A model generated the notes under the pieces. It did no database searches. It was not told the DNA's origin and saw only the letters and a program-made list of their open reading frames with translations. A program made the position numbers and the translations under genes. From Octopus sinensis (taxonomy: Eukaryota): a stretch of 64,000 nt of DNA. The stretch covers positions 9,052,001-9,116,000 of the forward strand of contig NC_043014.1 of the NCBI RefSeq assembly GCF_006345805.1. The letters are read 5' to 3'. Every line of letters begins with the position of its first letter. Within the stretch, counting starts at the first letter, position 1. Shown piece after piece: positions 1 through 63,469 of the stretch.

Positions 1-435
1 CAGCTGGTCAAATGCAGTAATTTTCAAAATGCAGTAATCAAATTGTATACTGCAGTGCATTAGCATGCATTAAAGCAAAACTTCTCAAAATGACACGCAA
101 CAATATTAACGAAACATTTTGACTCCATTTTCCTTTTCCAAATAGAGTTTCCGGTTATATATATATATTTCATCGCTTTGTTATTAGATTTAAAACGTAT
201 AAAAGCAACATTATTTTAGTAAATATGTCACCTTGCCCATCTCTTTCAAAGCCTTGAAACCCTATAGGAAACATTATATTGAGAGATAAATAAAATAAAT
301 TTAATCGGTGAATACATTTAATAAGTGAACGAGCATCATTTATATATCCCACATCTATTAACCCCCTCCCCCCCATATATATATATATATAATTATATGT
401 TACGGGTGAAGATATTTTGTACGTATATGATGATG

Positions 436-673
436 TAGGCGCAGAAGTGGCTGTGTGGAAAGAAGGTCGATTGCCAACCACATGATTCCGGGTTCAGTCC
501 CACTGCGTGGCATTTCGAGCAAGTGTCTTCTACTATACCCTCGGGCCGACGAAAGCCTTGTGAGTAGACTGAAAGAAGCTCGTCGTGTGTATATATATAT
601 ATATATATTATATATATATATATAATATAATATATATATATATATGTATATATATATATGTATATATATACAT

Positions 674-748
<75 letters not shown>

Positions 749-912
749 CAACCGATGCTGGTGTGTTTAAGACCCCATAACTTAGCAGTTCGGCAAAAGA
801 GGCTGATAGAATAAGTACAAGGGTAACAAAGAATAAATCCTGGGGTCGATTTGTTTGACTAAAAGGCTGTGCTCCATCATGACCGCAGTCAAATGACTGA
901 AACAAAAATAAA
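436..912 (+). mobile_element. SINE family A (tRNA-like head, CORE-like segment, internal microsatellite, 3' body)
   Basis: Head ggcgcagaagtggctgtgtgg with B-box-like ggttcagtccc; internal (TA)n(TG)n; 3' body ending gactgaaacaa. About ten homologous copies in the window. Confidence 0.85.
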
Positions 913-1637: not shown

Positions 1638-1721
1638 TATTTATGTGTGTGTGTGTGTGTATGTATGTCTAATATATATGTGTATATGTATGGCTAATCG
1701 ATTATGTGCGTAACTAGTTGG

Positions 1722-1800
1722 TACCTATTTCATCAAAACCCGAAAGGATGAAAGACAAAGTCGACCATAACGGAATCTTGAACTCAGAACGCAAAGCCGG
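1722..1800 (-). mobile_element. SINE family E fragment
   Basis: cgaaaggatgaaagacaaagtcgac...gaactcagaacg matches other E copies. Confidence 0.65.
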
Positions 1801-2544: not shown

Positions 2545-2778
2545 CACCGACAATAACAACAAAAATGGTTTCAAATTTTGACACAAGGCCAGCAAGTTCA
2601 GGGAGAGGTTTGATTGGTTAATTCGATCCCAGTGCATAAATGCTAGTCGTCTTATCGATCGCGAAAGGATGAAAGGTAATGTCGACGTCGGCGGGATTTG
2701 AACGCAGAACGTAAAGACTGACAAAATACTGCTAAGCATTCTGGGCGGCGTCCTAACGATTCTGCCAGCTCACCGCCT
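2545..2778 (-). mobile_element. SINE family E, alternative 3' tail, diverged
   Basis: Head ...ctgccagctcaccgcc and central gaaaggatgaaagg module; tail differs from the main E tail. Confidence 0.75.
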
Positions 2779-2943: not shown

Positions 2944-3885
2944 AGAAGATGAAGAAACAACCAAAAGGTATAAAACAAATGAATCCAAACTAAAAATAGA
3001 ACAGCAACGAACCATGATAAAACGATGGCAAGAAAAGCCCCTTCATGGTAAATACTGGACTAACTAAACGCAAAAGAAATAGACAAGAAAAAATCCCAGC
3101 AATGGTTGAGAAGCTCAGGACTCAAGCAGCAGAAACAGAGGGATTTTTAATTGCAGCACAAGACCAAAGCCTCCCCACAGAAATTACCAAAAACATGTAA
3201 TGAAAAGAAATATTACAAGTAACTGCAGAAATTGGAGATGGACAAGAAACAATAAATCATATTATCTCTGGCTGCCCAGTCCTGGCTAAGAAGGAATATA
3301 TTCACAGACAATGACAGAGTGGAACCTACATACATTGGAAGCTATGCCAACATTATGGAATAACAACAGAAAAAAGATGGTATAGGCACACACCAGAAAA
3401 GGTCACAGAAAACGAGAAAGCAACCATACTCTGGGATATGCCGATACACACAGATAGAGAAATTAAGGCCAACAGACCAGATATAGTTGTCAGAGACCAT
3501 GAAGAAGAAAAAATGCTTTCTAATTGATGTATCAATACGGCTGATGACAACGTGTCTCTAAAAGAATGGAGAAACTCTCAAAATACAAAGACCTGGAAAT
3601 AGAGGTAACTAGAATGTGGAATTTGAAAACAGAAACAATTCCTATCATAGTAGGTGCATTAGGCATGATAAAAAAATATTCAGACAAATAATAACAAAAA
3701 ACCAGGACTTACAAACACATATAACATACAGAAAATTGCACTACTAGGCACTGCACACATCCTACGCAGAACACTTTCCATACAATAACCATCAGAGCAT
3801 CACAACAAATCACAGCACATACCCAAGGCACACAGAGCTGCGCTCGGTAGTGAAGTGAAAGCACGCTATAAAAATAAAACTACTG
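2944..3885 (+). mobile_element. R4/Dong-clade non-LTR retrotransposon, 5'-truncated and frameshifted (CCHC knuckle plus restriction-like endonuclease, 3' UTR)
   Basis: Manual translation across frameshifts gives WQEKPLHGKYW, FLIAAQDQSL, C..CGDGQETINHIISGCPVLAKKEY, ILWDMPIHTDREIKANRPDIVV, KYKDLEIEVTRMWNLK, KIALLGTAHILRRTLS*; (TAA)n on both sides. Confidence 0.85.
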
Positions 3886-3899
3886 AATAATAATAATAA

Positions 3900-3950
<51 letters not shown>

Positions 3951-4065
3951 TATAATAATAATAATTATAATGATAATAATTATAATGATAATAATAATGA
4001 TAATAATAATAATAATAGTGACAATGATAATGACAATAATAATAATAATAATTATAATAATAATA

Positions 4066-4098
<33 letters not shown>

Positions 4099-4237
4099 TA
4101 TGATAATAATATGACAATAATAATAATAATAATAATAATAAATAATAATAATAATATAATAATATAATAATATAATATAATAATAATAATAATATAATAA
4201 TAATAATAATAATATAATAATAATAATAATAATAATA
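3886..4237. repeat. (TAA)n microsatellite
   Basis: Direct inspection; source of ORFs 3970-4167 and 4052-4255. Confidence 0.95.
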
Positions 4238-4680
4238 TCCTGTGGGGTGTAACATCCAGTAGGATCACCTGACCAGGGATAGGAAACTGGACGTTATTGT
4301 GGTGTATAAAAAAGAAGGAACATATATGATTATCAACGTAGCATGCCCCCGTGACAGCAGGATCAATGTGAAAGAAAAAATAAACAACTATGACGATTTA
4401 AAGTGGGAAATACGAAGGTTGTGGTCAATGAAGAGAGTAGACGTGATACCAGGAGTAATTAGTGAACTTGGGAATATCAGCACTCACCTACCAGCATGGT
4501 TGAAAAAGATCGGTGCAAGTGTGAAAGTAGAACGCCTACAAAAATCAACATTGCTTGTAACTGCAGGAATTCTTCGCAGGGTTCTTCAAGCATGACCAGT
4601 AAACAAGTGTCACCTTACTCTGCTGGGTGTGGACAACTGATACTTTCCATGATACCCAGCAAAATAAGCTGTGAGTTTTC
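4238..4680 (+). mobile_element. Second, divergent R4/Dong-type endonuclease fragment
   Basis: ORF 4299-4595: IINVACPRDSRI...YDDLKWEIRRLWSMKRVDVIP...LQKSTLLVTAGILRRVL, collinear with the end of the 2944-3885 ORF. Confidence 0.75.
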
Positions 4681-5110: not shown

Positions 5111-5316
5111 AACGCCGGGCGAAATGCGTAGCCGTATTTCGTCTGCCGTTACGTTCTGGGTTCAAATTCCGCCGAGGTCGACTTTGCCTTTCATCCTTTC
5201 GGGGTCGATAAATTAAGTACCAGTTACGCACTGGGGTTGATGTAATCGACTTAATCCGTTTGTCTGTCCTTGTTTGTCCCCTCTGTGTTTAGCCCCTTGT
5301 GGGTAGTAAAGAAATA
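5111..5316 (+). mobile_element. SINE family E (tRNA-like head, Nin-like central domain), 5'-truncated
   Basis: gttcaaattcc B box; ttgcctttcatcctttcggggtcgataaattaagtaccag resembles the Nin/Inv domain as I recall it; tail gtagtaaagaaata. Confidence 0.85.
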
Positions 5317-11640: not shown

Positions 11641-11856
11641 GGGGGGGGGGGGCTATGGGGCGGTCGGACAAGTTGTTTTGAGAAAATTTGGTTTCAATGT
11701 TTGACAACTCAGCACCGTCCATTAGACGGGGGCGTTTTGCTCGTGTTTAATATTAGAGTAAATGAAGGAAAGGTAATTATTGGATATAATTGGGAGCTTA
11801 TTTGGATTGAGAAATGTTTCTCCAAGAATTCAATGAAAAGTCAAGAAAAGAAGTCA

Positions 11857-12022
11857 TAGGCGTAGGAGTGGCTGTGTGGTAAGTAGCTTGCTTACCAACC
11901 ACATGGTTCCGGGTTCAGTCCCACTGGGTGGCACCTTGGGCAAAGTGTCTTCTGCTATAGCCCCGGGCCGACCAAAGCCTTGTGAGTGGATTTGGCAGAC
12001 GGAAATTGAAAGAAGCCCGTCG

Positions 12023-12056
<34 letters not shown>

Positions 12057-12229
12057 TGTTTGTGTGTCTGTGTTTGTCCCCCCCCCCCCAACATCGCTTG
12101 ACAGCCGATGCTGGTGTGTTTACGTCCCCGTAACTTAGCGGTTCGGCAAAAGTGACCGATAGAATAAGTACTAGGCTTACAAAGAATAAGTCCTGGGGTC
12201 GATTTGCCTGGCTAAAGGCGGTGCTCCAG
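11857..12229 (+). mobile_element. SINE family A, 3' end truncated
   Basis: Homology to other A copies up to gtgctccag. Confidence 0.88.
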
Positions 12230-12835
12230 TGCTCAGCCTCGAGTAGAAAAGAATATATACCAGTCGGGTGCTCGTGTAGTCTTTCCTCGCACCCTCGATG
12301 TTCCTTTTGGTCAAATGTAGGGCGGCCGATGGGGCGTCTGCTCTCGACTACATAGAAACCTAAAGCAATTATCAAAGTATGGTAAACGTTACTCCACTCT
12401 TGTTAAAGAGTGACCACTGCATCTTTAAGAATACGACAGATGCGTGATTCAGTAGTGGTCAGTAGGCTTTGTACATTTTTGCTACCAATAAAATGTTTAA
12501 TCTTATTTAATGTTAATAGTCGAAAAAGTTGAAATATTTGCACAATCGCTTACTGCTAAGCTAATCTTAAATCATTTAAAAATTTTATTCTATCTATATA
12601 ATTTTAAAATTTCTTTTTGGTGAATATCCAATAATTTTCTATCGTATAAATACATAATTTTCTCATAATTATAAATTTCCCATTTTATCTCCCAAACTAA
12701 CTGCTATCTAAAATAGCATTTTCTCTAGCACCAAATTATAGCTTTATTTTTGAATTTTAACCATATTTAACTTCTTTACTCAGTAAACAGTCCATATAAG
12801 CTCCGCCCCTAGAATCTTATTTAAACCTCGGGATA

Positions 12836-13045: not shown

Positions 13046-13272
13046 TCCTCAGAAAATAAAGACAAAATTGCATAGCTTACGTCAAGTAATTTATATCCCT
13101 CTGAGCTGTATTAAATAAGCAGAACAAATATTTTAACATTTAGTTCGCATATTTTCCAATTGTTTTTCAGTCTGAGATATTGAAGAAGAAAAAGTAGTTT
13201 ACTTTTTAAATCTTTCAAAACCCCGTTATAATGTTTCGCTCTGTATAAGTCTTTTTTAACATATCACTATAT

Positions 13273-13876
13273 ATTTCTTTACTACCCACAAGGGGCTAAA
13301 CACAGAGAGGACAAACAAGGACAGACAAACGGATTAAGTCGATTACATCGACCCCAGTGCGTAACTGGTACTTAATTTATCGACCCCGAAAGGATGAAAG
13401 GCAAAGTCGACCTCGGCGGAAGTTGAACTCAGAACTTAACGACAGACGAAATACCTATTTCTTTACTACCCACAAGGGGCTAAACACAGAGAGGACAAAC
13501 AAGGACAGGCAAACGGATTAAGTCGATTACATCGACCACAGTGCGTAACTGGTACTTTTTTAATCGACCCCGAAAGGATGAAAGGCAAAATCGACCTCGG
13601 CGGAATTTGAACTCAGAACGTAACGGCAGACGAAATACCTATTTCTATTTCTTTACTACCAACAAGGGGCTAAACACAGAGAGGTCAAACAAGGACAGAC
13701 AAACGGATTAAGTCGATTACATCGACCGCAATGCGTAACTGGTACTTATTTAATCGACCCCGAAAGGATGATAGGCAAAGTCCACCTCGGCGGAATTTGA
13801 ACTCAGAACGTAGCGGCAAACGAAATACTGCTAAGCATTTCACCAGGCACGCTAACGTCTCTGCCAGCTCGCCGCC
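13273..13876 (-). mobile_element. SINE E trimer within one 19-bp TSD
   Basis: Three ~180-bp units, one head; TSD ttttaacatatcactatat at 13254-13272 and 13877-13895. Confidence 0.9.
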
Positions 13877-16299: not shown

Positions 16300-17900
16300 C
16301 AATGAGAAAATTCATAATGTGTTCACAGTTAGAGCCAATTGCTTAATTCCTTCTTTTCTTTGCACAAAAATAACTTTTAATTATAGCTAGTGACTCATTA
16401 TGATTATCACCACCCTTTCTAAAATTAGGCTCAACTAGCATAGGATTTCAACAATTTTTTCGTCTAATGAAAGTTAGAATTGTAGGAAGTAGCTGAAAGC
16501 TTCAGATCTCCCCCAAAGGCCACTAAATATGTTCACTTGATTATCGGCTAATCTTCTGATTGATATTAATCTTTTATCTGATTTTGCGCATATCTGAGCT
16601 CGATCTAGAAAGCGATTCTTATTGCTCTGTGAACTTGGTCTTAAAACACAAATCTTATTGCATTTATTATCTTTGGTCTTAATTCTCATGTTTTAGGTTG
16701 ACGTATCGAATCTATGACACATTCTATTTCAAATAATCTTTTCTGCTCTAGGTACAAAGCCCGAAAGTTTTTGGGGAGGGAGCCAATCGATTAGATCGAC
16801 CCCAGAATGCAACGGGTGCTTAATTGATCGACTCCGAAAGGATGAAAGCCAAAGTCAACTTAGGTGGAATTTGAACTCTGAATGTAAAGACAGATGAAAT
16901 ACTGCTAAGCATTTCGCCCGGCGAGCTAACGTTTCTTATTTCTTTATTGCCCACAAGGGGCTAAATATAGAGGGGACAAACAGGGACAGAAAAACGGATT
17001 AAGTCGATTACGACGATCCCAGTGCGTAACTGGTACTTAATTTATCGACCCCGAAATGAGGAAAGGCAAAATCAACCTCGGCGGAATTTGAACTCGGAAC
17101 GTAACGGCAGACAAAATACATATTTCTTTACTACCCACAAGGGGCTAAACACAGAGGGGACAAACAAGGACAGACAAACGGATTAAGTCGATTAAATCGA
17201 CTCCAGTGTTTCACTGGTACTTAATTTATCGACCCCGAAATGAGGAAAGGCAAAGTCGACCTCGGCGGAATTTGAACTCAGAGCGTAACGGCAGACGAAA
17301 TATCGCTAAGCATTTCTCCCGGCGAGCTAACGATTCTTCCAGCTCGCCGCCTTATTCTATTTCAAATAATGTTACTTTGTTCAAAGCGGTTCCTAATGTA
17401 GTTTCTCATCGTTGTCATATTTCTTCCGAATTTCAGAATAATTTCATCTGGAAAATTTTGTGCATCTTCCAGAAGATTTAGCTCATTGGAAAAATAGCTT
17501 GTCTGCATTATAATTATCGAATATATCTCATATTACGAATTACCTGGATATATCACCAATAATGTTATCTGGAGTCATTGGGTGTTTCGTGTTATATCAC
17601 TCACCCAGGAAAGCTACAGATGTGCTGCAGTGTCCCACTCCTCAGGTACACAGAGAAAGCTGTCGTCTCTACTTTCACCAAAACAAGTAGGGTAGTTTTA
17701 AAGAACCGTTGTAAACGGTTTGTCTTTAAAGCTTTATGCATTGGAACTCCAGGAATAATTTTTGCCCTTCTCTCTTTGTTTCCAGCTTCTTATGTACTTT
17801 TTCCCAGCTGGATGTATCCCAATCACGCACTCGGGTCGGTCCTCCTGTACTGACTTTTATCCTGGATCAGTGATGCCTTGTTATTCGTCTGAATCTCGCC
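16300..17900 (-). pseudogene. Ancient LINE reverse-transcriptase remnant interrupted by the SINE E trimer
   Basis: Minus-strand fragments VPEEW...ITLLVIY, KFGRNMTT, FDT, FLDRAQI and GDLKLSAT occur in the order expected for RT motifs; many stops. Confidence 0.4.
16738..17353 (-). mobile_element. SINE E heterogeneous trimer within one 17-bp TSD
   Basis: TSD attctatttcaaataat at 16721-16737 and 17354-17370; the terminal unit carries the alternative tail. Confidence 0.85.
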
Positions 17901-18005: not shown

Positions 18006-18042
18006 TGCACGCAGAGTATTTAAAGGAAAATCAAAGGATATG

Positions 18043-18081
<39 letters not shown>

Positions 18082-18085
<4 letters not shown>

Positions 18086-18240
18086 CGCAAGTGTGGTAAG
18101 TAGCTTGGTTAGGAACCACATGGTTCCGGGTTCAGTCCCACTGCGTGGCACCTTGGTCAAGTGTCTTCTACTATTGCCACGGGCCGACCAAAGCCTTGGG
18201 AGTGGATTTTGTAGACGGAAACTGTAAGAAGCCCGTCGTA

Positions 18241-18280
<40 letters not shown>

Positions 18281-18502
18281 TAAGTGTGTATATGTTTGTG
18301 TGTCTGTGTTTGTTCCTCCAACATCGCTTGACAACCGATGGTGGTGTGTTTACGTCCCCGTAACTTAGCAGTTCGGCAAAGGATACCGATAGAATAAGTA
18401 CTAGGCTTACAAAGAATAAGTCCTGGGGTCGATTTGTTCGACTAAAGGCGGTGCTCCAGCATGGCCACAGTGAAATGACTGAAACAAGTAAAAGAGTAAA
18501 AG
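18082..18502 (+). mobile_element. SINE family A
   Basis: Homology; small deletion in the A-box region; tail aagtaaaagagtaaaaga. Confidence 0.88.
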
Positions 18503-18633
18503 ATATATATATATGTATGTATGTGTGTGTGTGTGTGTGCACGCAAAGTATTTAAAGTTAAATCAAAGGATATTAAAGTGAAGTCCCTGAAGAAACTGCA
18601 CCCGCATTACAATAGGGATGCAATTGCAACGGT

Positions 18634-19487: not shown

Positions 19488-19697
19488 TACTCTTTACTCT
19501 TTTACTTGCTTCAGCCATTTGACTGCGGCCATGCTGGAGCACCGCCTTTAGTCGAGCAAATCGACCCCGGGACTTATTCTTTGTAAGCCCAGTTCTTATT
19601 CTATCGGTCTCTTTTGCCGAACCGCTAAGTGACGTGGACGTAAACACACCAGCATCGTTTGTCAAGCAATGCTAGGGGGACAAACACAGACACACAA

Positions 19698-19738
<41 letters not shown>

Positions 19739-19910
19739 CATATATACGACAGGCTTCTTTCAGTTTCCGTCTACCAAATCCACTCACAAGGCATTGGTCG
19801 GCCCGAGGCTATAGCAGAAGACACTTGCCCAAGGTTCCACACAGTGGGACTGAACCCGGAACCATGTGGTTGGTTAGCAAGCTACTTACCACACAGCCAC
19901 TCCTGCGTCT
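19488..19910 (-). mobile_element. SINE family A, full length
   Basis: Reverse complement of the A pattern from head to tail. Confidence 0.9.
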
Positions 19911-20022
19911 GTTCAAAATTTTATAAGCAACGTTCTGTTTTGGAGAGGTATATCTTAGGCGAGATTGTGGCTGTGTCGTAAGACCTTGCTTCCCAACTAA
20001 TGGTTCCAGTATCACTCCCACA

Positions 20023-20343
20023 GTGGAGGCACATGGCCTAGTGGTTAGAGCAGCGGACTCGCGGTCGAGGGATCGCGGGTTCGAATCTCAGACCGGGCGA
20101 TGTGTGTGTTTATGAGCGAAACACCTAAGCTCCACGTGGCTCAGGCAGAATGAAATGGCGAACTTCTGCTGAATCTTTCACCACAACTTTCACTCACTCC
20201 TTCCTCCTGCATCTAGCAGCTCACCTGCGACGGACCGGCGTCCCATCCATGTGGGGAACCTATACGCCAGTGAAACCGGGAAACGGGCCCTTATGAGCCA
20301 GGCATGGCTCGAGGAGGAAGAAGGAAAAATAAAAATAAAAATA
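20023..20343 (+). mobile_element. SINE C (head 1, tail 2) nested in a decayed SINE A head, 13-bp TSD
   Basis: TSD tatcactcccaca at 20010-20022 and 20344-20356; A-like sequence on both sides (19962-20022, 20344-20410). Confidence 0.85.
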
Positions 20344-20596
20344 TATCACTCCCACACTGTGGCAACTTGGGCAAGTGTCATTTTATACGGCCCAGGGCTG
20401 ACCAAAGCACTGAAACATTCTATCTTCAAGTGAATTGTTTACATAGACGTATTCGCACATAAAACAGCGTCACTTTCAGTGATGGCTCTAAATTCTTAAG
20501 AAAATCTGTAGACATAACTTAAAAATGATATATATATACGATGCGGTGTAAGAAGTTCCTGGCCTTAAGTGTATCGCGAAAGGCATAGTTGGAGCC

Positions 20597-21720
20597 TCAT
20601 CGACGACAGTGAACAGGTGTGGGCGCCGTTCGTAAGGTGCGCCTTCCCGCAGCTCGTCTCACTGACCGAACTGCAAACATGAATAAAAAAGAGACCGAAA
20701 CTGGGCGATTGGGACCGAGAGTGTCGTCAAGCTGTACAGCAGCTCTGCCGTCCGGGATCAAACTTGTGCAACTTACAAACGACTCAAGCGTTCTATAGAG
20801 GATTAGTGGAGGGGAGGTCCGACGACACACTCGGGGTAAACCTGGGCGTCGACGAGAAATTCCTAACCCGCCTTTTTGAGGACGTCGTTCGGGCCGGGGC
20901 CTATGGATAACTTCCAGAGATCCCTGGCTTGGCAATGTTATCGAGACGCACTACCAGTTCGAGAGTAGATCTACAGACAGGGTTCGAAAACCATCACCGG
21001 ACCGACCTGCCCGAGATGCGGCCAGAGCGACGAAACCGTTCTGCACGCACTCGTGCAGTGTCCAGATATTTCAGAGCTGTGGACCTTCGTCGAACAGCTG
21101 TTGTCGCGTGTAGGACGGGCCCGGTTATCGGCCGAGTCTATCGTGAATATTGTTCCGCCACCTTCCTTTAAACGGGAAGGAAAAACAGTTTTCGTAACAC
21201 TGATAGCTATGGCGAAAGAATGCGTGTGGTGGACGCGTTTGAAAAGCTTACAAACAAACACTTTCCTTTCTGTTCAGTCTCTCGTTAACTTGTTCAAGTA
21301 CCACTTGAAAAGGAGGATGAGAATAGAGAGAAAAGTGTTGTCGAATGAAAGTCTGAATATAAAATGGGTAAATGTGGCAAAAATGGTCAGTATGAAAGAC
21401 GACACCATTTTAAGCATAAACCTATAACGAGAGGAAAGGTACATACTCTTAAGTACATTTTGAACTGCCTGAGGTGACCTTGGTCTTTTTTGTAGGTTTT
21501 TCTTTCCAAGCCTACACCTAAACTGTGAACAACATCGATTCTCCCTCTTTTTGGGGGAACTTTATATATTTCTTTCTTCTTTTGTACACCACATAACCCA
21601 AAGATCCCTATTGAACGAACTTTTTCTTTGTGTCCCACCCATCCCACCTCGAAAAGAAAAACTCTACATTGTATTTCGTCTATTTTCTGTGTTTAGCCCT
21701 GTGTGGCCATAATAAAAATA
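20597..21720 (+). mobile_element. Tx1/L1-clade LINE 3' fragment, copy 1 (ORF2 C-terminal zinc-binding region plus 3' UTR)
   Basis: DNFQRSLAWQCYRDALPV, CPRCGQSDETVLHALVQCP, then ORF 21053-21427. Confidence 0.8.
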
Positions 21721-21722
21721 TA

Positions 21723-22446
21723 TGCCTCCTTCCTTCAAACGGGAAGGAAGAGCTATTTTCATCATCCTTGTGGCTATGGCGAAAGAATGTATCTGGTGGA
21801 CGCGTCTGAAAGGATTGGAGACAAACACTTTCCTCTCTGGTCAATCTCTCATCAACTTCTTCAAGTACCACTTGAAAAGGAAAGTGAGAGTAGAGAGGCA
21901 AGTTTTGTCTAGCGAATGTTTTAAAAAAGATGGGTGAATGTAGCAAGGATGGCACGTATGAATGACGAAGCCACCACCTTGAGCATAATCCTATGAACCC
22001 AGAAATTGAAAACAGAGGGTTACCCACTTGCAAACAAATGGTGGTAACATATAACAATATTGACCAAGGTTACCGTGGTCTTTTTCGTAGGCTTTTCTGC
22101 CCACGGATAAACCTTACTTGTTGCTTTCCCCTTTACACCATATATCATAACACTGTGATACACGATCCCTATTGATCGTTCTTTTTTCCTCTTCCCTTTT
22201 TTTCCCCTTTTTTCTTCTTTTTCCATTTCTCTTTCCTTTTGTTTCCTTTTCCTTTCTTTTTTTTCTTTTTATTCTTTTTTTGTTTTTGTTTTTGTCTTTT
22301 CTTCCCTTTTACGATCCCTCTTGATCGAAAACCTACGCCACCCCCTTTTTTTTCTTTTGTTTTTGTTCTCTTCATCCCCCAAAAGAAAAGCTCTACCTTG
22401 TAACTTGTCCCATCTGTGTGCAGCCCTGTGTGGCCAATAAAGAAAC
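21723..22446 (+). mobile_element. Tx1/L1-clade LINE 3' fragment, copy 2, with (ATCT)n tail
   Basis: PPSFKREGRAIFIILVAMAKECIWWTRLKG; ends gccaataaagaaac followed by (tatc)n. Confidence 0.8.
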
Positions 22447-22517
<71 letters not shown>

Positions 22518-23726
22518 GACGACGGTGAACAGGTGTGGTCGCCGTTTGTGAGGCACGCTTTCCCGCAGCTCGTCTCCATGACCGAACTGCAGTCGTGGAT
22601 CAAAAAGAGGCCGAGGAAGGGCGAATGGCACCGCGAGTGTCGCGTTCCTCTCAAGCAACTCTGCCGTCCTGGGTCGACCTTAAGTGACTTCAACACAACC
22701 AAAGCATTCTATAGGGGGTTTAGTGGAGGGGAGGTACGACGACGAGCTCGGGGCGAACCTGGACGTCGACGAGGAGTACCTGACCCGCCTGTTTCGGACG
22801 ACTTTCGGGCCAGGGCCCATGGACAACTTCCAGAGATCCCTGGCCTGGCAGTGCTACCGAGAAGCGCTACCCGTTCGGGATAAGCTCTACAGACACGGCT
22901 CGAGAAACACAGGGGGGCCGACCTGCCCGAGATGCGGTCAGAGCGACGAAACCGTTCTGCACGCACTCGTTCAGTGTCCAACAATTTCCGACCTGTGGGC
23001 TTATGTCGAACAACTGCTGTCACGTGTGGGACGAGTCGGTTATCAGCTGAGTCTATCGTCATATTGTCACGCCTCCTTCCTTCAAACGTGAAGGAAGAGC
23101 TATTTTCATCATCTTGTGGCTATGGCGAAAGAATGTATCTGGTGGACGCGTCTGAAAGGATTGGAGACAAACACTTTCCTCTCTGGTCAATCTCTCATCA
23201 ACTTCTTCAAGTACCACTTGAAAAGGAAAGTGAGAGTAGAGAGGCAAGTTTTGTCTAGCGAATGTTTTAAAAAAGATGGGTGAATGTAGCAAGAATGGCA
23301 CGTATGAATGACGAAGCCACCTTGAGCATAGTCCTATGAACCCAGAAATCGAAAACAGAGAGTTGCTTATTTGCAAAAAAAAAAAAAAAGAAATATAAAA
23401 TGTGACCTCATTGACCGAGGTACCGTGGTCTTTTCCGTAGGCTTTTCTTTCCACGGGTAAACCTCACCTGTCCTCCCCTTTACACTTCATATTGACATTT
23501 CTGTGATAACGATCCCTATTGATCAATTTTTTTTCCTCTCCACCCCTTTTTTTTTTTTTTTTTTTTTTTTAACCCCACTTTTTGTCCTCTTTCTCCTTTT
23601 ACGATCCCTTTTGATCGAAAATCCCCCTTCCTTTTTTTTTTTTTTTTTTTTAAACCTTCAAAAGAAAAAGCTCTACCTTGTAATTTGTTCTATCTGTGTG
23701 CAGCCCTGTGTGGCTAATAAAGAAAC
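22518..23726 (+). mobile_element. Tx1/L1-clade LINE 3' fragment, copy 3, between (ATCT)n tracts
   Basis: ORF 22684-23091 with C-x2-C...H-x4-C knuckle; collinear with copy 1. Confidence 0.82.
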
Positions 23727-23727
23727 A

Positions 23728-23758
<31 letters not shown>

Positions 23759-23769
23759 ATTAACTACCC

Positions 23770-23828
<59 letters not shown>

Positions 23829-23897
23829 AATCTATCTCTATATCTCTCTCTCTCTCTATCTCTCTATCTATCTATCTATCTATATATCTATCTATCA

Positions 23898-23947
<50 letters not shown>

Positions 23948-24004
23948 ATCTATCTATCTATCTAACTATCCATCTATCTATCTATCTATCTGTCTGTCTA
24001 TCTG

Positions 24005-24055
<51 letters not shown>

Positions 24056-24125
24056 CTCTATCTATCTCTCTCTCTCTCTCTATCTATCTCTCTATCTCTC
24101 TCTCTATCTATCTGTCTATCAGTCT
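23727..24125. repeat. (ATCT)n microsatellite
   Basis: Direct inspection. Confidence 0.95.
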
Positions 24126-42026: not shown

Positions 42027-42419
42027 GGCGGCGAGCTGGCAGACACTTAGCGGTATTTCGTCTGCCGTTACGTTCTGAGTTCAAATTCCGCCGAGATCGA
42101 CTTTGCCTTTCATCCTTTCGGGGTCGATAAATAAAGTATCAGTTTCGCACTGGACTCGATGTAATCGACTTAATCCCTTTGTCTGTCCTTGTTTGTCTCC
42201 TCTATGTTTAGCCCCTTGTGGGTAGTAAAGAAATAGGTATTTTGTCTGCCGCTACGTTCTGAGTTGAAATTCCGCCGAGGTCGATTTTATTTTTCATCCT
42301 TTTGGGGTCGATAAATAAAGTACCAGTTTCGCACTGGGGTCGATATAATTGACTGAATCCGTTTGTCTGTCCTTGTTTGTCCCCTCTATGTTTAGCCCCT
42401 TGTGGGCAATAAAGAAATG
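42027..42419 (+). mobile_element. SINE E dimer within one 16-bp TSD
   Basis: TSD tataaacattaagtag at 42006-42021 and 42420-42435; junction aaagaaataggtatt near 42235. Confidence 0.9.
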
Positions 42420-48091: not shown

Positions 48092-49562
48092 TAGGAGGTT
48101 ACATCAAAAAGTTCCCGAACTAGTTATGTTTGATAAAAATGACAACTTATTTATGTAAGATTTAACAGGATCTCTGTGGAAATAATCACTTTGCATAGTA
48201 ATACACTGGTCTCAACGTTCATGTCTCTTTTAGAATCCGACCTGGAAATCTTTTTTTTCCTGAAGGGAGTCGAGGACCCTCCGCAATTCATTTTGCATCT
48301 CAGCAATGGTGTTAAAACCACGGCGAACATTGAGGTACATTTTCATGTCGGGAAAGAGATGGAAGTCCGCAAGTGCTAAATCTGTCGAATAGGGGTTCTC
48401 GTGTGGAAGCGAGACCATGTTGTTTCTGGCGAGAAACTCACGGATGAGGAGAGCTCGGTGGTAGGGTGTACCGTCGTCGTAAAAAATCTTATTCTTCTTG
48501 TTGTTTTCGCCGAATGTCCACCCTTAAACCGTCCAAAACGTCGCAGTAGATTTGTCAATTGACGTTCTGGCTCTGGAGGGCAAATTCACGATGCACAATA
48601 CCGCGGATGCCGTAAAAAGCGAGAAGCATACTCTTGAGTTAGTTGCAACTCTGTCGTGCTTTTGTCGGTCATGGAGACAAAGGTCTCTTCCGTTGTGACC
48701 CTAGCTTCTTCGTCTCATGGTTGTAATTGTAAACCCGACTCGCGTCATCATTTTCGACCCTCCACATGAAGGATGGGCCTTCAATGGCAGGCTGACGGAG
48801 ATCTTGACTGATTTCGACGCGATTTGTTTTCTGTTCAGTGGTCAACAGGCGGGATCAAACGTGGCAGAGATACGCCGTATGTTCAATTCATACGTTAGAA
48901 TTGCTAGACCCTCCACATGAAGGATGGGCCTTCAATGGCAGGCTGACGGAGATCTTGACAGATTTCGACGCGATGTTTTTTTTTTTTTCAGTGGTCAACA
49001 GGCGGGATCAAACGTGGCAGAGATACGCCGTATGTTCAATTCATACTTTAGGATTGCTGGTACCAATTTTTACGCAAGCAAACAGCAACAGAAACATCAC
49101 TGATTGTCTTCTGACGATCTTCATGCACGAGCTGATGAATATTCTCTATATTTCTGGGTCTGAGGCACATGGTGGGTCTTTCAGAACGCTTATCGTCTTC
49201 AAGGGATGTCCCTCCACTTTTGAAATACCCGCGCCACTCTAAACTTTGCATACGACCCATTGCCTCATCACTATAACCTTTCCAAAACTTGCTCAATATC
49301 TCTGGACCAGACTTTCCAACTTTAACGCGAAATTTCATGTTGGCTCTTTGTGCCAACTTCCTGCCCATGACAAAATCGCAGACTACAGCATACACATTAT
49401 AACAGATTCACCAGTTTCACAACTTACGAAGGAAACACAGCAATGTCACTTGGTACACTGACTCATGAAGGTCACTGCTAGCTCTTACTGCATAGGCAAC
49501 CATGTGCTGCCTTCTAGAGACGAGCTACAGAATTAGTTCGAGAACTTTTTGATACCACCTTT
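48092..49562 (-). mobile_element. Decayed Tc1/mariner DNA transposon, near full length
   Basis: TIRs ...atcaaaaagttcYcgaacta...; N-terminal QRANMKF...LEDDKRSERP (49048-49395); PYSTDLALADFHLFP (48230-48418), matching the mariner YSPDLAP-DF-LF motif. Confidence 0.85.
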
Positions 49563-49625: not shown

Positions 49626-51195
49626 GTGGAGACAGACACCCTCGCACATACATACAAGAATGCATATTCGTACACTCTTTGTTAATATGCTTTCTTCAAT
49701 TTGAAAAAGGGATTCTTTCACGAAATAATTCTGGATTTTAATCCGTTTATGCAGGGCTATAGAATATCATATAACTTTATTTTTATGCTTTCTACATGTA
49801 TCTTTTCGTATTTTGCTTAATCTCTTAATTTCATTGCCTAAAGACATTGTTTCAACAATGCTCGTACATATAAATTCTCAGGAACATATTATTTAAAGGC
49901 TTGCAACAGGCACGTTAAATATATCATAAACGCATCATACAGTATACCATAGAAATTAACTTTTGTTGACTTCTTGTATTTCGAACATGTGGAGTTACTA
50001 GTCTCTAACGCTCTGCACTACGACACACATTTTCAGTAAGGTGGAGTGTCGCTGTGTGAAATAAGATGCCAAGAAGCTCCTGCCACACGTCGCACCATCC
50101 GGGTATCGAGTCTGGATATAGTAATCTTGGGTCCAAGAGACTAAGCATTTGGGCATAAGCATTCATTTTCAATGTATAGGAAATATCTAATGATGGAAAC
50201 AATTTGCTGTGACCGAGTTAATGAATAAATTTAAATTGTATTTATATAAAGATTTCATACTCTTTATTTGGTTGTGTGAGTAATTCATTACTGCGTTGTT
50301 TATTGCTCATTAGTTGTTTTGCCTAAAAGACACACGCAGCTAGGTATGAAATAGAAAAAAATAATTACCATAATTTGAAAGATGTTGGGCTGCATATCCA
50401 CAGTTGCAAATTGAAGTGTTTACTGTAAAGTGCAAGGTAGAATGTTTAGGCATTAATTCAATAGATAATTAAATGTTAATTGTTAATGAGTAATTATACG
50501 CGTTAAATTAAAAAGCAATCATTATCTTTATTAGGGAAGAAAATGAGGATAAAATAATTTATCCGACAAGCTTATCTATTCCTAAGAATAATCGTGAATC
50601 AGGATGGATTTTCAAGACAATTAGAAGAAAAAATGATTAATCAACGAAAATTACACAGGTGTATTGTTTTATTCTGATTTCTCAAAAACTCAATTTTAAT
50701 AAGAAACAATTTGTGGCACAATAGGTTTTCATTTAGGCTGGCGAATAAAAGCAATTTTCTGTTATCTTGTATTTGTTTCAGTTATAGGATTTCCGCGATT
50801 GTAGGGCCCCACCTGGAAGCATTTGGTATTTCTTTATTACCCACTAGGGGCGACACAGAGGGGACACCACAAGACATTGGGGACATAGAACATTATAATT
50901 AAATTTATGAACAATGAATTATTAAATGAAAAAATGATAATATGAAAGCGATGCTAACAGCCCCATCCGCCAGCATCACTTACCTGTCCTTAATCACCCA
51001 TTTCCAAATACAATTCCTTCCTTTCTTATCACACTCTTCGTTTTCCTTTCATACTTCTCTATCATTTCATCCTGCATTTCATCAATTTTATACCCTCTTC
51101 CTCACGCTTCCTCACCAATGTGTCCATAAATTCATCTTTCAAAACCGCGTAACCTGGAAGCATTTGGTCGAACAAATCACCTCTAATCTCTTCTC

Positions 51196-52827: not shown

Positions 52828-53235
52828 TATTTCTTTATTGCCTACAGGGAGATAAACATAGAAGGTACAAACAAACGTATTAAGTCGATTACATCGACCC
52901 CAATGCATAACTGGTACTTATTTAATCGACCCCCAAAAGGATGAAAGGCAAAGTCAAACTCGGCGGAATTTGAACTCAGAACGTAACGGCAGACGAAATA
53001 CCTATTTCTTTACTACCCACAAGGGGCTAAACACAGAGGGGACAAAGAAGGACAGGAAAACGGGTTAAGTCGATTACATCGACCACAGTGCGTAACTGGT
53101 ACTTAATTTATCGACCCCGAAAGGATGAAAAGTAAAGTCGACCTCGGCGGAATTTGGACTCAGAACCTAATAGAAGACGAAATACCGCTAAGCATTTCGC
53201 CCTGCGTGCTACCGTTTCTGCCAGCTCGCCGCCTT
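52828..53235 (-). mobile_element. SINE E dimer within one 18-bp TSD
   Basis: TSD ttatcttcaaagaatatc at 52810-52827 and 53236-53253; junction gaaatacctatttc near 53001. Confidence 0.9.
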
Positions 53236-56562: not shown

Positions 56563-56758
56563 TTTCTACTCTAGGCACAAGGCTCGAAATTTTGGAGGTG
56601 GAGGGTAGTCGATCAGATCAACCCCAGTACGTAACTGGAGTCGATCTGATCGATCTGGTATAAAAGGCGGTGTCGACCTCGGCAGAATTTGAAATCCTAA
56701 CGTTTGTGTTTACGTTCTGAGTTCAAATTCCGCCGAGGTCGACTTTGCTTTTCATCTT
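56563..56758. mobile_element. SINE E (alternative tail, minus strand) joined to an inverted E fragment
   Basis: 56672-56693 is the reverse complement of 56722-56743 (one mismatch). Confidence 0.7.
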
Positions 56759-56855
56759 TGTGCCTACAATATTGTCATTAATGATTTGTTATTTAAAGAA
56801 AAGTAATTATTTTCAGCTTAACATTTAATTAGGTTAACAGTTTTGTTCATTATTT

Positions 56856-57579
56856 ACATTATTTACATTTGACGGATATTTGCCCTCATCTTGTTTGTTG
56901 TTAACACAACGTTTCGTCTGATATACCCTCCAGCCTTCATCAGGGGTTTTGGGGAAATTTCGAACGTGGGTTCTCGTTTCTAAGGTATTTTCGATGTTGT
57001 TGTTGTTATTATTATTATCATTCAGTAGTTTTATTTTTATAGCGTCCTTTCACTTCACTACCGAGCGCAGCTCTGTGTGCCTTGTATTGAAAGTGTTCTG
57101 CGTAGGATGTGTGCAGTGCCTAGTAGTGCAATTTTCTGTATATTATATGTGTTTGTAAGTCCTGGTTTTTTTATTATGTATTTGTCTGAATAGTTTTTTA
57201 TCATGCATAATGCACCTATTATGATAGGAATTGTTTCTGTTTATAGATTCCACATTCTAGTTACCTCTATTTCCAGGTCTTTGTATTCTGAAAGCTTCTC
57301 CATTTCTTTTAGGGACATGTCATCTGCTATTATTATTATATTATTATTATTATTATTATTGTTGTTATTATTATTCAGGTAACTGCCTGGAATTTCAGGC
57401 AATGACCTGAACCTGAACAACAACAACAACAACAACAATAATAATAACATCAAAAGGATGAGAACCCAGGTTTGAAATTTCTCCAAGACACCTGACGATG
57501 GCTGGAGGGTATATCCGGTGAGACGTTGTGTTAACAACAAACAAGAAGAGGGAAAATATCCGTCCAATGTAAATAATGT
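56856..57579. mobile_element. Fold-back Penelope-LTR-like element with a degenerate hammerhead in each arm
   Basis: Arms 56856-56975 and 57460-57579; CUGAUGA..GAAACGUU on minus at 56903-56948; CUGACGA..GAGACGUU on plus at 57487-57532. Confidence 0.65.
57023..57327 (-). mobile_element. R4/Dong 3' fragment (family of 2944-3885) nested in an AAT tract
   Basis: ADDMSLKEMEKLSEYKDLEIEVTRMWNL; same 3' end; internal deletion in the UTR. Confidence 0.85.
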
Positions 57580-57954
57580 ACATAATACCTCATCTCTTAA
57601 ATATAGAATCGTAACAGACAGTTTTTTCATGATGGTATGGAAAAGAAATCTTGAGATATTTCTCGCATGTATTCTCTTTTCTCCGTACTTAATTAATCGT
57701 CAGTGATTATGCTAATGAATATTTATATTTAAATGAGGTCGAGACCATAGTCATTACATGCAAATTTTGATCCCATTTATCAATAGAACTTAATATTTTC
57801 TTCACCAAATTGCGTCTTTGCTTATTGTTGTAAATAACTTCAGCTTCTGAGAAGCCAATTTAGTGCACAATAAATTATATTAATTAAACCGCTTATGAAT
57901 AATTTCTTTAGCAAGCTATATAATTTCCTACGTTGTTTATACATAGAATACGTT

Positions 57955-59416: not shown

Positions 59417-59802
59417 GATAGTCGATTGCGCGAGGGTGACAGAGGGATAGATTTAGTTACATTGTCCGCAAATATGTTAGGTAGACTTTCATTGCGCTTT
59501 AAGCAAAGGGAGCAGGTATGCAAATGCTGGCCTTAAAAAAAACTTGAAAATGAGATAAAAAAGATTATGCATATGCGTTAGATTTTATACAAGAAAATTT
59601 CAGCATCCCTTGCATAATATGAAATCGATGTAGACAACAAAAGTCGATGCATTGTTTGTTAACTTTATGGACAATCCTGAAGACAAGAAATGTTTCTTTC
59701 CGGAATGAAGTCAAAGGCTGGTTCCAGATTTTTAGCTCGGCCAGCATGTTCAAGGGAATGGATAAATCTACTACTTTGGCTTCAGTGCTCAACTACAACT
59801 TA

Positions 59803-59912
59803 ATTTATCTATCCCAAACCGATGAAAGGCAAAGCCGACCTCAGTAAAATTCGAACTCAGAACGTAAAAAAGGGGACGAGATGCCGCTAAGCATTTTGCT
59901 CGGCATGTTAAC
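59803..59912 (-). mobile_element. SINE E fragment, diverged
   Basis: gatgaaaggcaaagccgacctc...gaactcagaacgt. Confidence 0.65.
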
Positions 59913-63238: not shown

Positions 63239-63464
63239 GCCGGCGAGCTGGCAGAATCGTTAGCACGCCGGGCGAAATGCTTAGCAGTACTTCGTCTGCT
63301 GTTACGTTCTGAGTTCAAATTCCGCCGAGGTCGACTTTGCCTTTCATCCTTTCGAGGTCGATAAATTAAGTACCAGTTACGCACTGGGGTCGATGTAATC
63401 TACTTAATCTGTTTGTCTGTCTTTGTTTGTCCTCTCTGTGTTTAGCCCCTTGTGGGTAGTAAAG

Positions 63465-63469
<5 letters not shown>
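63239..63469 (+). mobile_element. SINE family E, full-length monomer
   Basis: Head gccggcgagctggcagaatcg to tail gtagtaaagaaata. Confidence 0.9.

What the first reader, a model, noticed from the sequence alone, without database searches (positions are those of the whole stretch)
22404..22445. SINE E shares its 3' tail with the Tx1/L1-like LINE in the same window
Seen: LINE end ttgtccccatctgtgtgcagccctgtgtggccaataaagaaa versus SINE E end ttgtcccctctatgtttagccccttgtgggcaataaagaaa (about 42380-42418); about 35 of 42 columns are identical with one gap. LINE copy 1 also has tctgtgtttagccc. E copies have 13-19-bp TSDs. Known: SINEs of the stringent type borrow the 3' end of their partner LINE, and long TSDs fit L1-clade insertion. 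Inference: a Nin-like-domain SINE mobilised by a Tx1-clade LINE, a pairing I do not recall as commonly described.
Basis: partly seen in the sequence, partly recalled or inferred. Interest (0 to 1): 0.72.

Follow-up and report, generated by a model that had tools for sequence, protein, structure and literature searches.

The report
Octopus SINE borrows L1-like LINE tail
A short parasitic repeat (SINE) in this octopus DNA ends in the same roughly 50-base tail as an L1/Tx1-like LINE nearby. The same tail pairing appears in another octopod genus, so this LINE lineage very probably copies the SINE: an ordinary mechanism with a partner type rarely reported in animals.

Summary
LINE 22405-22445 and SINE E 42377-42417 match at 34 of 41 bases with no gap. 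The full local alignment covers about 50 nt and ends at the last base of both elements. Its score is 45, against 19.9 +/- 2.6 for 1000 shuffles.

The window holds three 5'-truncated, head-to-tail copies of one LINE (about 20530-21724, 21725-22445, 22518-23725). It also holds eight SINE E insertions (13 units) with 13-19 bp target-site duplications.

A near full-length relative in Argonauta hians has ORF1 with a CCHC knuckle and ORF2 with an APE endonuclease, RT and zf-RVT. Its closest solved structure is human L1 ORF2p. It ends in the same tail, and so do about 35 SINE copies around it, which look like several families.

Between LINE subfamilies only the last 13-18 nt of the 3' UTR are conserved. 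These are followed by subfamily-specific microsatellites: (TCTA)n, (ATT)n or (CA)n.

Other SINEs in the window share SINE E's head and core but carry different tails. [quoted passage not shown]

Not shown: Tx1 subclade membership, Nin-DC identity of the core, and that the window's LINE subfamily is the direct donor (tail identity is only 74-80%). This is a new member of a known kind, of moderate interest.

The parts
22396..22445 (+). 3' tail of LINE copy B (the finding): CCTTGTAACTTGTCCCATCTGTGTGCAGCCCTGTGTGGCCAATAAAGAAA
21725..22445 (+). LINE copy B, 5'-truncated: last ~90 codons of ORF2 (with frameshifts) plus a pyrimidine-rich 3' UTR
22448..22517 (+). (TATC/TCTA)17.5 perfect microsatellite directly after the copy B tail; read as the LINE's own 3'-terminal repeat
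   Evidence: compare TCTAT after the tail in A. hians, (ATT)n in L017 and (CA)n in L006
22518..23725 (+). LINE copy C, 5'-truncated: C-terminal ~270 codons of ORF2 including the CX2CX8HX4C zf-RVT motif, 3' UTR, and the same tail at 23676-23725
23728..24120 (+). (TATC/TCTA)~99 microsatellite after the copy C tail
20530..21724 (+). LINE copy A, a more diverged subfamily (K2P 0.31 to C). It starts after a (TA)n run. Its tail at ~21668-21715 contains tctgtgtttagccctgtgtggcc. It abuts copy B.
42027..42419 (+). The 3' unit ends GGGCAATAAAGAAA (tail 42368-42417). A 16-bp target-site duplication (tataaacattaagtag) flanks the whole dimer.
34987..35215 (-). Full-length SINE E monomer (head ggcggcgagctggcagaa..., core gtcgactttgcctttcatcctttcgg..gtaccag, LINE-like tail); 13-bp target-site duplication
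13272..13876 (-). SINE E trimer; a 19-bp target-site duplication flanks the whole trimer
16937..17351 (-). SINE E dimer; the 3' unit has the GGGCAATAAAGAAA tail; it abuts another SINE
52828..53233 (-). SINE E dimer; 18-bp target-site duplication
5113..5316 (+). SINE E monomer, 5'-truncated
30382..30592 (+). SINE E monomer, truncated at the 3' end inside the tail
63241..63469 (+). SINE E monomer inserted in a (TA)n run
50829..51152 (-). 324-bp element of unknown type with a 16-17 bp target-site duplication. Only its last ~48 nt resemble SINE E (81-83%, the best non-SINE match to the tail). It may be the 3' end of a sister LINE subfamily.
2566..2776 (-). Related SINE with the same head and core as SINE E but a different tail (...ctgaacttgctggccttgtgtcaaaatttgaaacc)
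16735..16909 (-). Related SINE (same core) with a third tail (...ctccccaaaaactttcgggctttgtacctagagcagaaaag)

Best explanation
SINE E is a non-autonomous retroposon. Its last ~50 nt are a copy of the 3' end of an L1-superclade (probably Tx1-type) LINE lineage of octopods. That tail contains the motif GCCC(C)TTGTGG(G/C)N, which can form a 3-4 bp hairpin with a CTTGT loop. It is followed by AATAAAGAAA and a short T/A-rich end.

The proposed mechanism is as follows. The LINE's ORF2 protein recognises the tail in trans on the SINE transcript, which makes this a 'stringent' type pair. Its APE endonuclease nicks an AT-rich target. Reverse transcription is primed there with a few bases of microhomology, since the target-site duplications start with ATA/TATA and the element ends GAAATA. 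The second nick falls 13-19 bp away, which produces the target-site duplications.

Shown here: homology of the tails, their terminal position, their conservation in the LINE lineage while the rest of the 3' UTR diverges, their presence on what look like several SINE families, and the target-site duplications. Inferred: recognition by ORF2p, the direction of transfer (LINE to SINE), and the role of the hairpin.
For: The tail is present in three LINE copies in the window.

A near full-length A. hians relative (L001) has ORF1 and ORF2 with Exo_endo_phos, RVT_1 and zf-RVT. It ends GTCCCCTCTATGTTTTTGCCCTTGTGGCTAATAAAAGAAA. Further LINE copies end GGCCCTTGTGGCTAATAAAGAAAtctat (L003) and GGGCCCTTGTGGCCAATAAAAGAAATC(ATT)n (L017).

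About 35 SINE copies in 43 kb of A. hians, which by eye fall into several families, end GGCCCTTGTGGCTAATAGAGAAATCTAT. Only the terminal 13-18 nt are conserved between the LINE 3' UTRs.

SINEs with the same head and core but other tails are in the window. Target-site duplications are 13-19 bp and start with (A)TA. One hairpin pair changes G-C to C-G between A. hians and the octopus SINE E and 50829 tails.

SINE E units are 1-10% from their consensus, and the octopus literature reports recently active L1-Tx1 families (PMC13282606).
Against: Tail identity between SINE E and the window's own LINE copies is only 74-80%, so these copies are unlikely to be the direct source. SINE E lacks the (TCTA)n that follows the LINE tail.

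The hairpin is tiny (-3.8 kcal/mol). In the octopus LINE copies one of its pairs is a C-C mismatch.

No intact LINE is in the window, and no octopus full-length copy was obtained. With only three LINE copies, age overlap is weakly supported.
Confidence: 0.85

Rival explanations
1. The true partner is a different subfamily of the same LINE lineage, whose tail is closer to SINE E. The three copies in the window are only cousins of the donor.
For: Tail identity to LINE B/C is 74-80%. It is 81-83% for the 324-bp element at 50829-51152 and 78-80% for A. hians L001. LINE subfamilies differ strongly outside the tail. O. vulgaris is reported to have 13 recently active L1-Tx1 families (PMC13282606).
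Against: This refines the main explanation rather than contradicting it. The 50829 element has no recognisable ORF2 and no other copy was found.
Confidence: 0.55
2. The transfer went the other way, or by recombination. On this view a SINE-derived tail was captured by the LINE, and SINE E is mobilised by some other LINE such as RTE or CR1.
For: Sequence similarity alone does not give direction. RTE and CR1 are abundant and active in octopus (PMC9115989; PMC13282606).
Against: The tail motif is present in LINE relatives down to ~56-69% protein identity, each with its own 3' UTR and terminal microsatellite. It is attached to what look like several unrelated SINE bodies. SINEs with the same body but other tails exist. 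This pattern fits a LINE-owned module copied repeatedly onto SINEs.
Confidence: 0.06
3. The resemblance is chance or compositional, for example a shared AATAAA signal plus T/G-rich sequence.
For: The tails are short. They include a common polyadenylation hexamer and low-complexity stretches.
Against: 0 of 1000 dinucleotide shuffles reach the observed score, z is about 9.6, and the alignment is anchored at both 3' termini. The pairing is independently repeated in a second genus.
Confidence: 0.02
4. The (TCTA)n next to LINE copies B and C is a preferred target, as for the microsatellite-specific Tx1 elements Kibi and Koshi, rather than the LINE's own terminal repeat. SINE E would then not share the LINE's integration behaviour.
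For: Some Tx1 families insert specifically into microsatellites (PMC4494074). Copy C lies between two (TATC)n arrays and copy A starts after (TA)n.
Against: In A. hians a constant TCTAT follows GAAA in nearly all SINE copies and in the L003 LINE, whatever the flank. Sister subfamilies instead carry (ATT)n or (CA)n after the same tail. That pattern fits element-borne repeats. SINE E sits in unique sequence with ordinary target-site duplications.
Confidence: 0.15

Closest known systems
Stringent-type SINE/LINE pairs with a common 3' tail (e.g. UnaSINE1/UnaL2 in eel; tortoise Pol III SINE/CR1; Ohshima and Okada)
   Same: The SINE's 3' end is a copy of the LINE's 3' end. The tail is the conserved part of the LINE 3' UTR. 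A small stem-loop is followed by short terminal repeats rather than a long poly(A). Several SINE families use one tail.
   Different: The known animal pairs listed in PMC3747384 involve L2, CR1, RTE, I, Rex1 and Vingi LINEs, not the L1 superclade. Recognition has not been tested here.
L1-clade stringent pairs: ZmSINE2/3 with LINE1-1_ZM (maize, sorghum) and SINEX-3_CR with L1-1_CR (Chlamydomonas) (PMC3472496, PMC3747384)
   Same: An L1-clade LINE with a conserved 3'-end sequence is shared with tRNA-type SINEs. This argues for specific rather than poly(A)-only template recognition.
   Different: Those cases are in plants and a green alga and end in (T)n or poly(A). Here the host is an animal (octopod) and the LINE ends in subfamily-specific microsatellites.
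Tx1 clade of non-LTR retrotransposons (Tx1L, Keno, Kibi, Koshi; crocodilian Tx1-Mar with SINEU, PMC4494074)
   Same: It is an animal L1-superclade element with a gag-like CCHC ORF1. It tends to lie head to tail or next to microsatellites. A SINE is proposed to depend on it.
   Different: SINEU was linked to Tx1-Mar by shared target preference, not by a shared tail, and it has poly(A). Clear target specificity is not seen for SINE E. Tx1 membership of this LINE was not tested phylogenetically.
Nin-DC / Deu-core SINE superfamily (Piskurek and Jackson 2011) and the 'tRNA-Deu' SINEs annotated in octopus genomes (PMC8967140)
   Same: A central domain is shared by at least five SINE families in the window that carry at least three different tails. 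This is the defining behaviour of a conserved-core SINE superfamily. Known Nin-DC SINEs likewise switch LINE partners.
   Different: The listed Nin-DC partners are L2 and CR1 (Nematostella; PMC3747384). Identity of this core to Nin-DC could not be checked.

Membership tests
Stringent-type SINE/LINE pair (shared 3' tail) | SINE and LINE share sequence at their extreme 3' ends beyond chance | tested here: met
   34/41 ungapped; ~50-nt local alignment ending at both termini; score 45 against shuffles 19.9 +/- 2.6, 0/1000
Stringent-type SINE/LINE pair (shared 3' tail) | The tail is an integral, conserved part of the LINE while the rest of the 3' UTR diverges | tested here: met
   The tail is present in window copies A-C and in L001, L003 and L017. 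Only the terminal 13-18 nt match between 3' UTRs of subfamilies.
Stringent-type SINE/LINE pair (shared 3' tail) | Conserved stem-loop in the tail supported by compensatory changes | tested here: inconclusive
   A 4-bp hairpin with a CTTGT loop, -3.8 kcal/mol. One pair is G-C in 6 sequences, C-G in 4 and mismatched in 4.
Stringent-type SINE/LINE pair (shared 3' tail) | Short tandem repeats, not poly(A), at the 3' terminus | tested here: met
   For the LINE: (TCTA)n, (ATT)n and (CA)n. A. hians SINEs end TCTAT. SINE E itself ends only GAAATA.
Stringent-type SINE/LINE pair (shared 3' tail) | LINE ORF2p mobilises the SINE through the tail | not testable with these tools
   Needs a retrotransposition assay
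L1 superclade of non-LTR retrotransposons | Two ORFs; ORF2 with N-terminal APE endonuclease, RT and a C-terminal Cys-His motif | tested here: met
   L001: Exo_endo_phos 5e-11, RVT_1 2e-18, zf-RVT 6e-8. Window copies have CPRCGQSDETVLHALVQC, and PF13966 is on all close homologues.
L1 superclade of non-LTR retrotransposons | Closest characterised relatives are L1 ORF2 proteins | tested here: met
   Best PDB matches are human L1 ORF2p: 5e-22 for the RT half, and 8e-13 collinear over residues 5-524 for the endonuclease half. R2 scores 1e-13 or worse. The PDB holds no RTE, CR1 or I-clade proteins, so this is not exclusive.
Tx1 clade | RT groups with reference Tx1 elements in a phylogeny (RTclass1/Repbase) | not testable with these tools
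   No reference Tx1 sequence could be obtained, and the hits carry no clade names. Indirect support: octopus annotations list L1-Tx1 but no plain L1 (PMC13282606, PMC8967140).
Tx1 clade | Type I-like ORF1 (gag-like CCHC knuckle, no Transposase_22) | tested here: met
   CHRCGLPGHIRSGC in L001 ORF1 (zf-CCHC E = 0.06, below the cut-off). zf-CCHC scores 23.9 bits, above the cut-off, in the L015 relative. No Transposase_22 hit. Such ORF1s in animals are said to fit Tx1 (PMC5203782). An RRM was not detected.
Tx1 clade | Target-specific insertion | tested here: inconclusive
   LINE copies lie head to tail and next to (TA)n/(TCTA)n. L015 has two full-length copies in tandem. But SINE E and A. hians copies sit in varied sequence, with only an ATA/TATA start to the target-site duplication.
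tRNA-derived SINE (SINE2) | Head recognisable as a tRNA with A and B boxes | tested here: not met
   ARAGORN finds none. An Rfam scan of a full copy at E <= 10 gives no tRNA match. By eye there are only box-like motifs: TGGCAGAA and GAGTTCAAATTCC. The head may be too diverged for these tools.
Nin-DC / Deu-core SINE superfamily | Central domain homologous to the published Nin-DC consensus | not testable with these tools
   No reference sequence is held in papers or supplements. What was shown is that the core is shared by several SINE families with different tails. tRNA-Deu is reported as a main octopus SINE class (PMC8967140).

The most novel reading that the evidence does not exclude
The GGCC(C)TTGTGG...AATAAAGAAA tail, followed by a microsatellite, marks a stringent-type L1/Tx1 LINE lineage that is old in octopods and perhaps in molluscs. 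Relatives at ~40% protein identity still carry GGCCTTGTG near their 3' end. On this reading the lineage drives a large share of the octopod-specific SINE expansion. It could also be the so far unidentified partner of the 3' tail shared by several bivalve and gastropod SINE families (PMC4824008, PMC4758252). It would be the first animal case of specific 3'-end recognition in the L1 clade. That would support the idea that stringent recognition is ancestral for L1 and was relaxed in mammals.
Probability: 0.25. Interest if true: 0.7.

Novelty: new member of a known kind. Interest (0 to 1): 0.5.

Why it matters
SINEs are the largest repeat class in Octopus genomes: about 40% of transposable-element content in one survey and 11.6% of the O. 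vulgaris genome in another. Their expansion is octopus-specific. Yet the papers I could search name no LINE that moves them, and attention has gone to an RTE element.

This pair points to an L1/Tx1-like lineage as the engine for at least one abundant SINE family in Octopus and for many SINE copies in Argonauta.

It also bears on how L1-clade reverse transcriptases choose templates. The published survey of 58 tail-sharing pairs has L1-clade examples only in plants and a green alga. An animal example with a conserved motif and variable terminal repeats gives a concrete tail to test in retrotransposition assays.

Tried and rejected
- **Rfam and tRNA scans.** Rfam at gathering threshold on the whole window, ARAGORN on the window and on two A. 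hians loci, and an E-value Rfam scan of a full SINE E copy found no tRNA or other RNA family. The tRNA origin of the head therefore rests on box-like motifs only.
- **Clade names from protein searches.** Two searches returned almost only unnamed cephalopod and ENA proteins.
- **Reference Nin-DC or bivalve tail sequences.** None is held in the papers or their supplements.
- **More octopus LINE tails or other copies of the 50829 element.** Exact-pattern scans of metagenome contigs (twice) and prokaryote genome contigs found nothing. One look-up (P0004) was not on record.
- **Other TE-like ORFs in the window.** Pfam found no hits.
- **Possible SINE fragment at the LINE end.** I considered that the LINE tail might be a short 5'-truncated SINE E fragment inserted next to the LINE. 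I rejected this because the junction is identical in three window copies and in relatives from other assemblies, and B and C share LINE-specific differences from SINE E.
- **Weak lead only.** The tail of the SINE at 16735-16909 resembles the L016 LINE tail by eye, but blastn does not support it.

Full report
**What is at the coordinates**

The window is AT-rich, repeat-dense animal DNA. Its LINE-encoded peptides match only cephalopod proteins. These include one from Octopus bimaculoides at 97% identity over a short stretch, and Argonauta hians proteins. The source is therefore an octopod, most likely an Octopus species.

At 22404-22445 the sequence reads cttgtcccatctgtgtgcagccctgtgtggccaataaagaaa, followed at once by a perfect (TATC)17.5 array. 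This is the 3' end of a 5'-truncated LINE copy (B, 21725-22445).

Two more copies lie head to tail with it:
- Copy A (about 20530-21724) is a more diverged subfamily and directly abuts B.
- Copy C (22518-23725) starts right after B's microsatellite. It ends in the same tail, followed by about 99 TATC units.

Copies A and C encode the C-terminal part of ORF2, with frameshifts and stops. This includes a CX2CX8HX4C motif. No long RT reading frame exists anywhere in the window.

**The SINE**

'SINE E' is a unit of about 215-230 bp with three parts:
- a head, ggcggcgagctggcagaaacgttagc...;
- a core, gtcgactttgcctttcatcctttcggggtcgataaattaagtaccag;
- a tail, ccttgtttgtcccctctgtgtttagccccttgtgggtagtaaagaaa.

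The tail pattern occurs 12 times in the window, against 0 expected by chance. I count eight insertions holding 13 units: four monomers, three dimers and one trimer.

Target-site duplications are 13, 16, 18 and 19 bp. In the multimers they flank the whole multimer. They begin with ATA, TATA or GATA, which overlaps the element's own end GAAATA.

ARAGORN and Rfam do not recognise the head as a tRNA. Only box-like motifs are visible by eye.

**Is the resemblance real?**

Yes.

blastn of SINE E against the window finds the LINE tail as its only match in another kind of element (E = 8e-5).

A local alignment of a whole SINE E copy with LINE copies B and C covers about 50 nt. It ends on the last bases of both elements. 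It scores 45 and 40, against a mean of 19.9 (sd 2.6, maximum 30-33) for 1000 dinucleotide shuffles.

**Evidence from outside the window**

A protein search led to a 20.8-kb A. hians locus, L001, with a near full-length relative:
- ORF1 is 639 aa with a CCHC knuckle.
- ORF2 comes in two pieces.
- Pfam assigns Exo_endo_phos, RVT_1 and zf-RVT to ORF2.
- The best solved homologue of both halves is human L1 ORF2p. The endonuclease half aligns collinearly over L1 residues 5-524.
- A relative's ORF1 (L015) passes the zf-CCHC threshold, and none hits Transposase_22.

The L001 LINE ends gtcccctctatgtttttgcccttgtggctaataaaagaaa. This matches SINE E about as well as the window's own LINE copies do.

Other LINE copies end as follows:
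- A second A. hians copy (L003) ends ggcccttgtggctaataaagaaatctat.
- A copy from a metagenome contig (L017) ends gggcccttgtggccaataaaagaaatc followed by (ATT)n.
- More distant relatives keep parts of the motif.

In the 43 kb of A. hians sequence, about 35 SINE copies end in GGCCCTTGTGGCTAATAGAGAAATCTAT. By eye, from their upstream sequences, they belong to several families with different bodies; I did not cluster them.

When the 3' UTRs of the LINE subfamilies are compared, only the terminal 13-18 nt match significantly.

Inside the window, at least three other SINEs share SINE E's head and core but carry different tails.

Together these results show three things. The tail belongs to the LINE lineage. 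It is under constraint there. It is a module that SINE bodies acquire and exchange.

**How it most likely works**

The pattern is that of a stringent-type SINE/LINE partnership. The LINE's ORF2 protein recognises a specific 3' element and starts target-primed reverse transcription there, so any transcript carrying the tail is copied.

The recognised element probably includes GCCC(C)TTGTGG(G/C)N. This can form a 3-4 bp hairpin with an invariant CTTGT loop. One of its pairs is G-C in Argonauta and C-G in the octopus SINE E and 50829 tails. In the octopus LINE copies that pair is mismatched. The hairpin is too small for firm support.

The element also includes AATAAAGAAA. The main SINE E subfamily has AGTAAA in place of AATAAA.

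The repeats that follow the LINE tail differ by subfamily: (TCTA)n, (ATT)n or (CA)n. A constant TCTAT follows the tail in Argonauta SINEs whatever the flank. I therefore read these repeats as element-borne terminal repeats, not as targets.

The AT-rich starts of the target-site duplications, and their 13-19 bp length, fit an L1-like endonuclease with microhomology priming.

Recognition by ORF2p, the role of the hairpin and the direction of transfer are all inferences.

**Limits**

- The window's LINE copies match the SINE E tail at only 74-80%. A 324-bp element at 50829-51152 has its own 16-17 bp target-site duplication and a body unlike any other sequence I held. It matches the tail at 81-83%. 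The direct donor is therefore probably a sister subfamily not present in the window.
- I could not place the RT against reference Tx1 sequences. Tx1 assignment rests on three things: the animal host, the CCHC-type ORF1 (PMC5203782), and published octopus annotations that list L1-Tx1 but no plain L1 among LINE classes (PMC13282606, PMC8967140).
- I could not compare the core with a Nin-DC reference.
- Age overlap is only loosely supported. SINE E units are 1-10% from their window consensus. LINE copies B and C look nearly identical in the coding part by eye, though their overall K2P distance is 0.16.

**Comparison with what is known**

Tail sharing between SINEs and LINEs is textbook. A survey of 58 such pairs lists L2, CR1, RTE, I, Rex1, Vingi, R4 and Tad1 partners. 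L1-clade partners appear there only in maize/sorghum and in Chlamydomonas. It has no octopus entry (PMC3747384, PMC3472496).

Crocodilian SINEU was tied to Tx1-Mar by shared target preference, not by a shared tail (PMC4494074). Known Nin-DC SINEs pair with L2 or CR1.

Octopus repeat papers report abundant tRNA-Deu and tRNA-Core SINEs and active L1-Tx1, RTE, CR1 and Dong-R4 LINEs. None names a SINE partner.

Two mollusc SINE papers describe a tail shared by several bivalve and gastropod SINE families whose LINE is unidentified. Whether that is the same tail could not be checked.

Repbase and Dfam entries, which I cannot read, may already record this pairing.

**Verdict**

This is a new member of a known kind: a stringent-type SINE/LINE pair whose LINE belongs to the L1 superclade in an animal. 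Interest is moderate. It would rise if genome-wide work shows that this lineage drives much of the octopod SINE load, or that the tail is the shared mollusc tail.

Noticed in passing
window 13272-13876, 16937-17351, 42027-42419, 52828-53233: SINE E occurs as dimers and a trimer with an identical internal junction (GAAATAG|GTATTTCGTCTGCC, the second unit starting ~45 nt into the head). Target-site duplications flank the whole multimer, so multimers retrotransposed as units. In all three dimers the 5' unit has GGGTAGTAAAGAAA and the 3' unit has GGGCAATAAAGAAA. The latter is closer to the LINE and more diverged from the unit consensus.
   Followed up: partly
window 20530-24120; L015 348-13712; L001 4900-5360: Elements of this system tend to sit head to tail. 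Examples are three LINE fragments in the window, two full-length LINE copies in tandem in a distant relative (L015), and three full SINE copies in tandem in A. hians. This suggests integration next to an existing tail or terminal repeat.
   Followed up: partly
window 50829-51152 (-): A 324-bp element with a 16-17 bp target-site duplication. Only its last ~48 nt resemble the SINE E/LINE tail, and this is the best non-SINE match. It has no ORF, no other copy in the held sequences, and none in the metagenome scan.
   Followed up: partly
window 2566-2776 (-), 16735-16909 (-), 59719-59890 (-), 31049-31082 (+), 1719-1791 (-), 56710-56759 (+): SINE families that share SINE E's head and/or core domain but have at least two other tails. 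One contains GGCCTTGTG again. This is module exchange within a conserved-core SINE superfamily.
   Followed up: partly
L017 1990-2105; L001 11164-11215; L006 end; window 22448-22517: Sister LINE subfamilies carry different microsatellites after the same conserved tail: (ATT)n, (CA)n and (TCTA)n. LINE insertions of this lineage could therefore seed microsatellites.
   Followed up: partly
L015 6906; L016 10710: LINE relatives at ~40% protein identity (unknown ENA eukaryote assemblies) still have GGCCTTGTG 45-65 nt before an AATAAA near the 3' end. No SINE-like copies with this motif were found in those two loci.
   Followed up: partly
window 19970-20330 (+): A different SINE-like repeat (ggaggcacatggcctagtggttagagcagcgg...gggttcgaatc...) ending in an A-rich run lies just upstream of LINE copy A. 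Its tail is unrelated to the LINE tail.
   Followed up: no
window 393-905, 11854-12375, 18020-18542, 19669-19926, 36768-37226 and others: A very abundant repeat, seen as recurring ORF translations such as ...PGTMWLVSKLLTTQPLLRL, is regularly attached to (TA)n/(CA)n microsatellites. It is probably another major octopus SINE family.
   Followed up: no
window 48233-49407 (-); 3315-4592 (+) and 57061-57699 (-); 61664-62038 (+): ORF fragments that look by eye like a mariner-type transposase, the C-terminal part of another retroelement protein (RPDIVV...ILRRVL motif, two copies), and a GIY-YIG-like ORF. Pfam gave no hits, so these labels are unverified.
   Followed up: partly
P0004: A cephalopod LINE ORF2 fragment is deposited in NCBI as a 'zinc-binding domain-containing protein' of a Herbaspirillum metagenome-assembled genome. 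This is likely host-DNA contamination of that bin.
   Followed up: no
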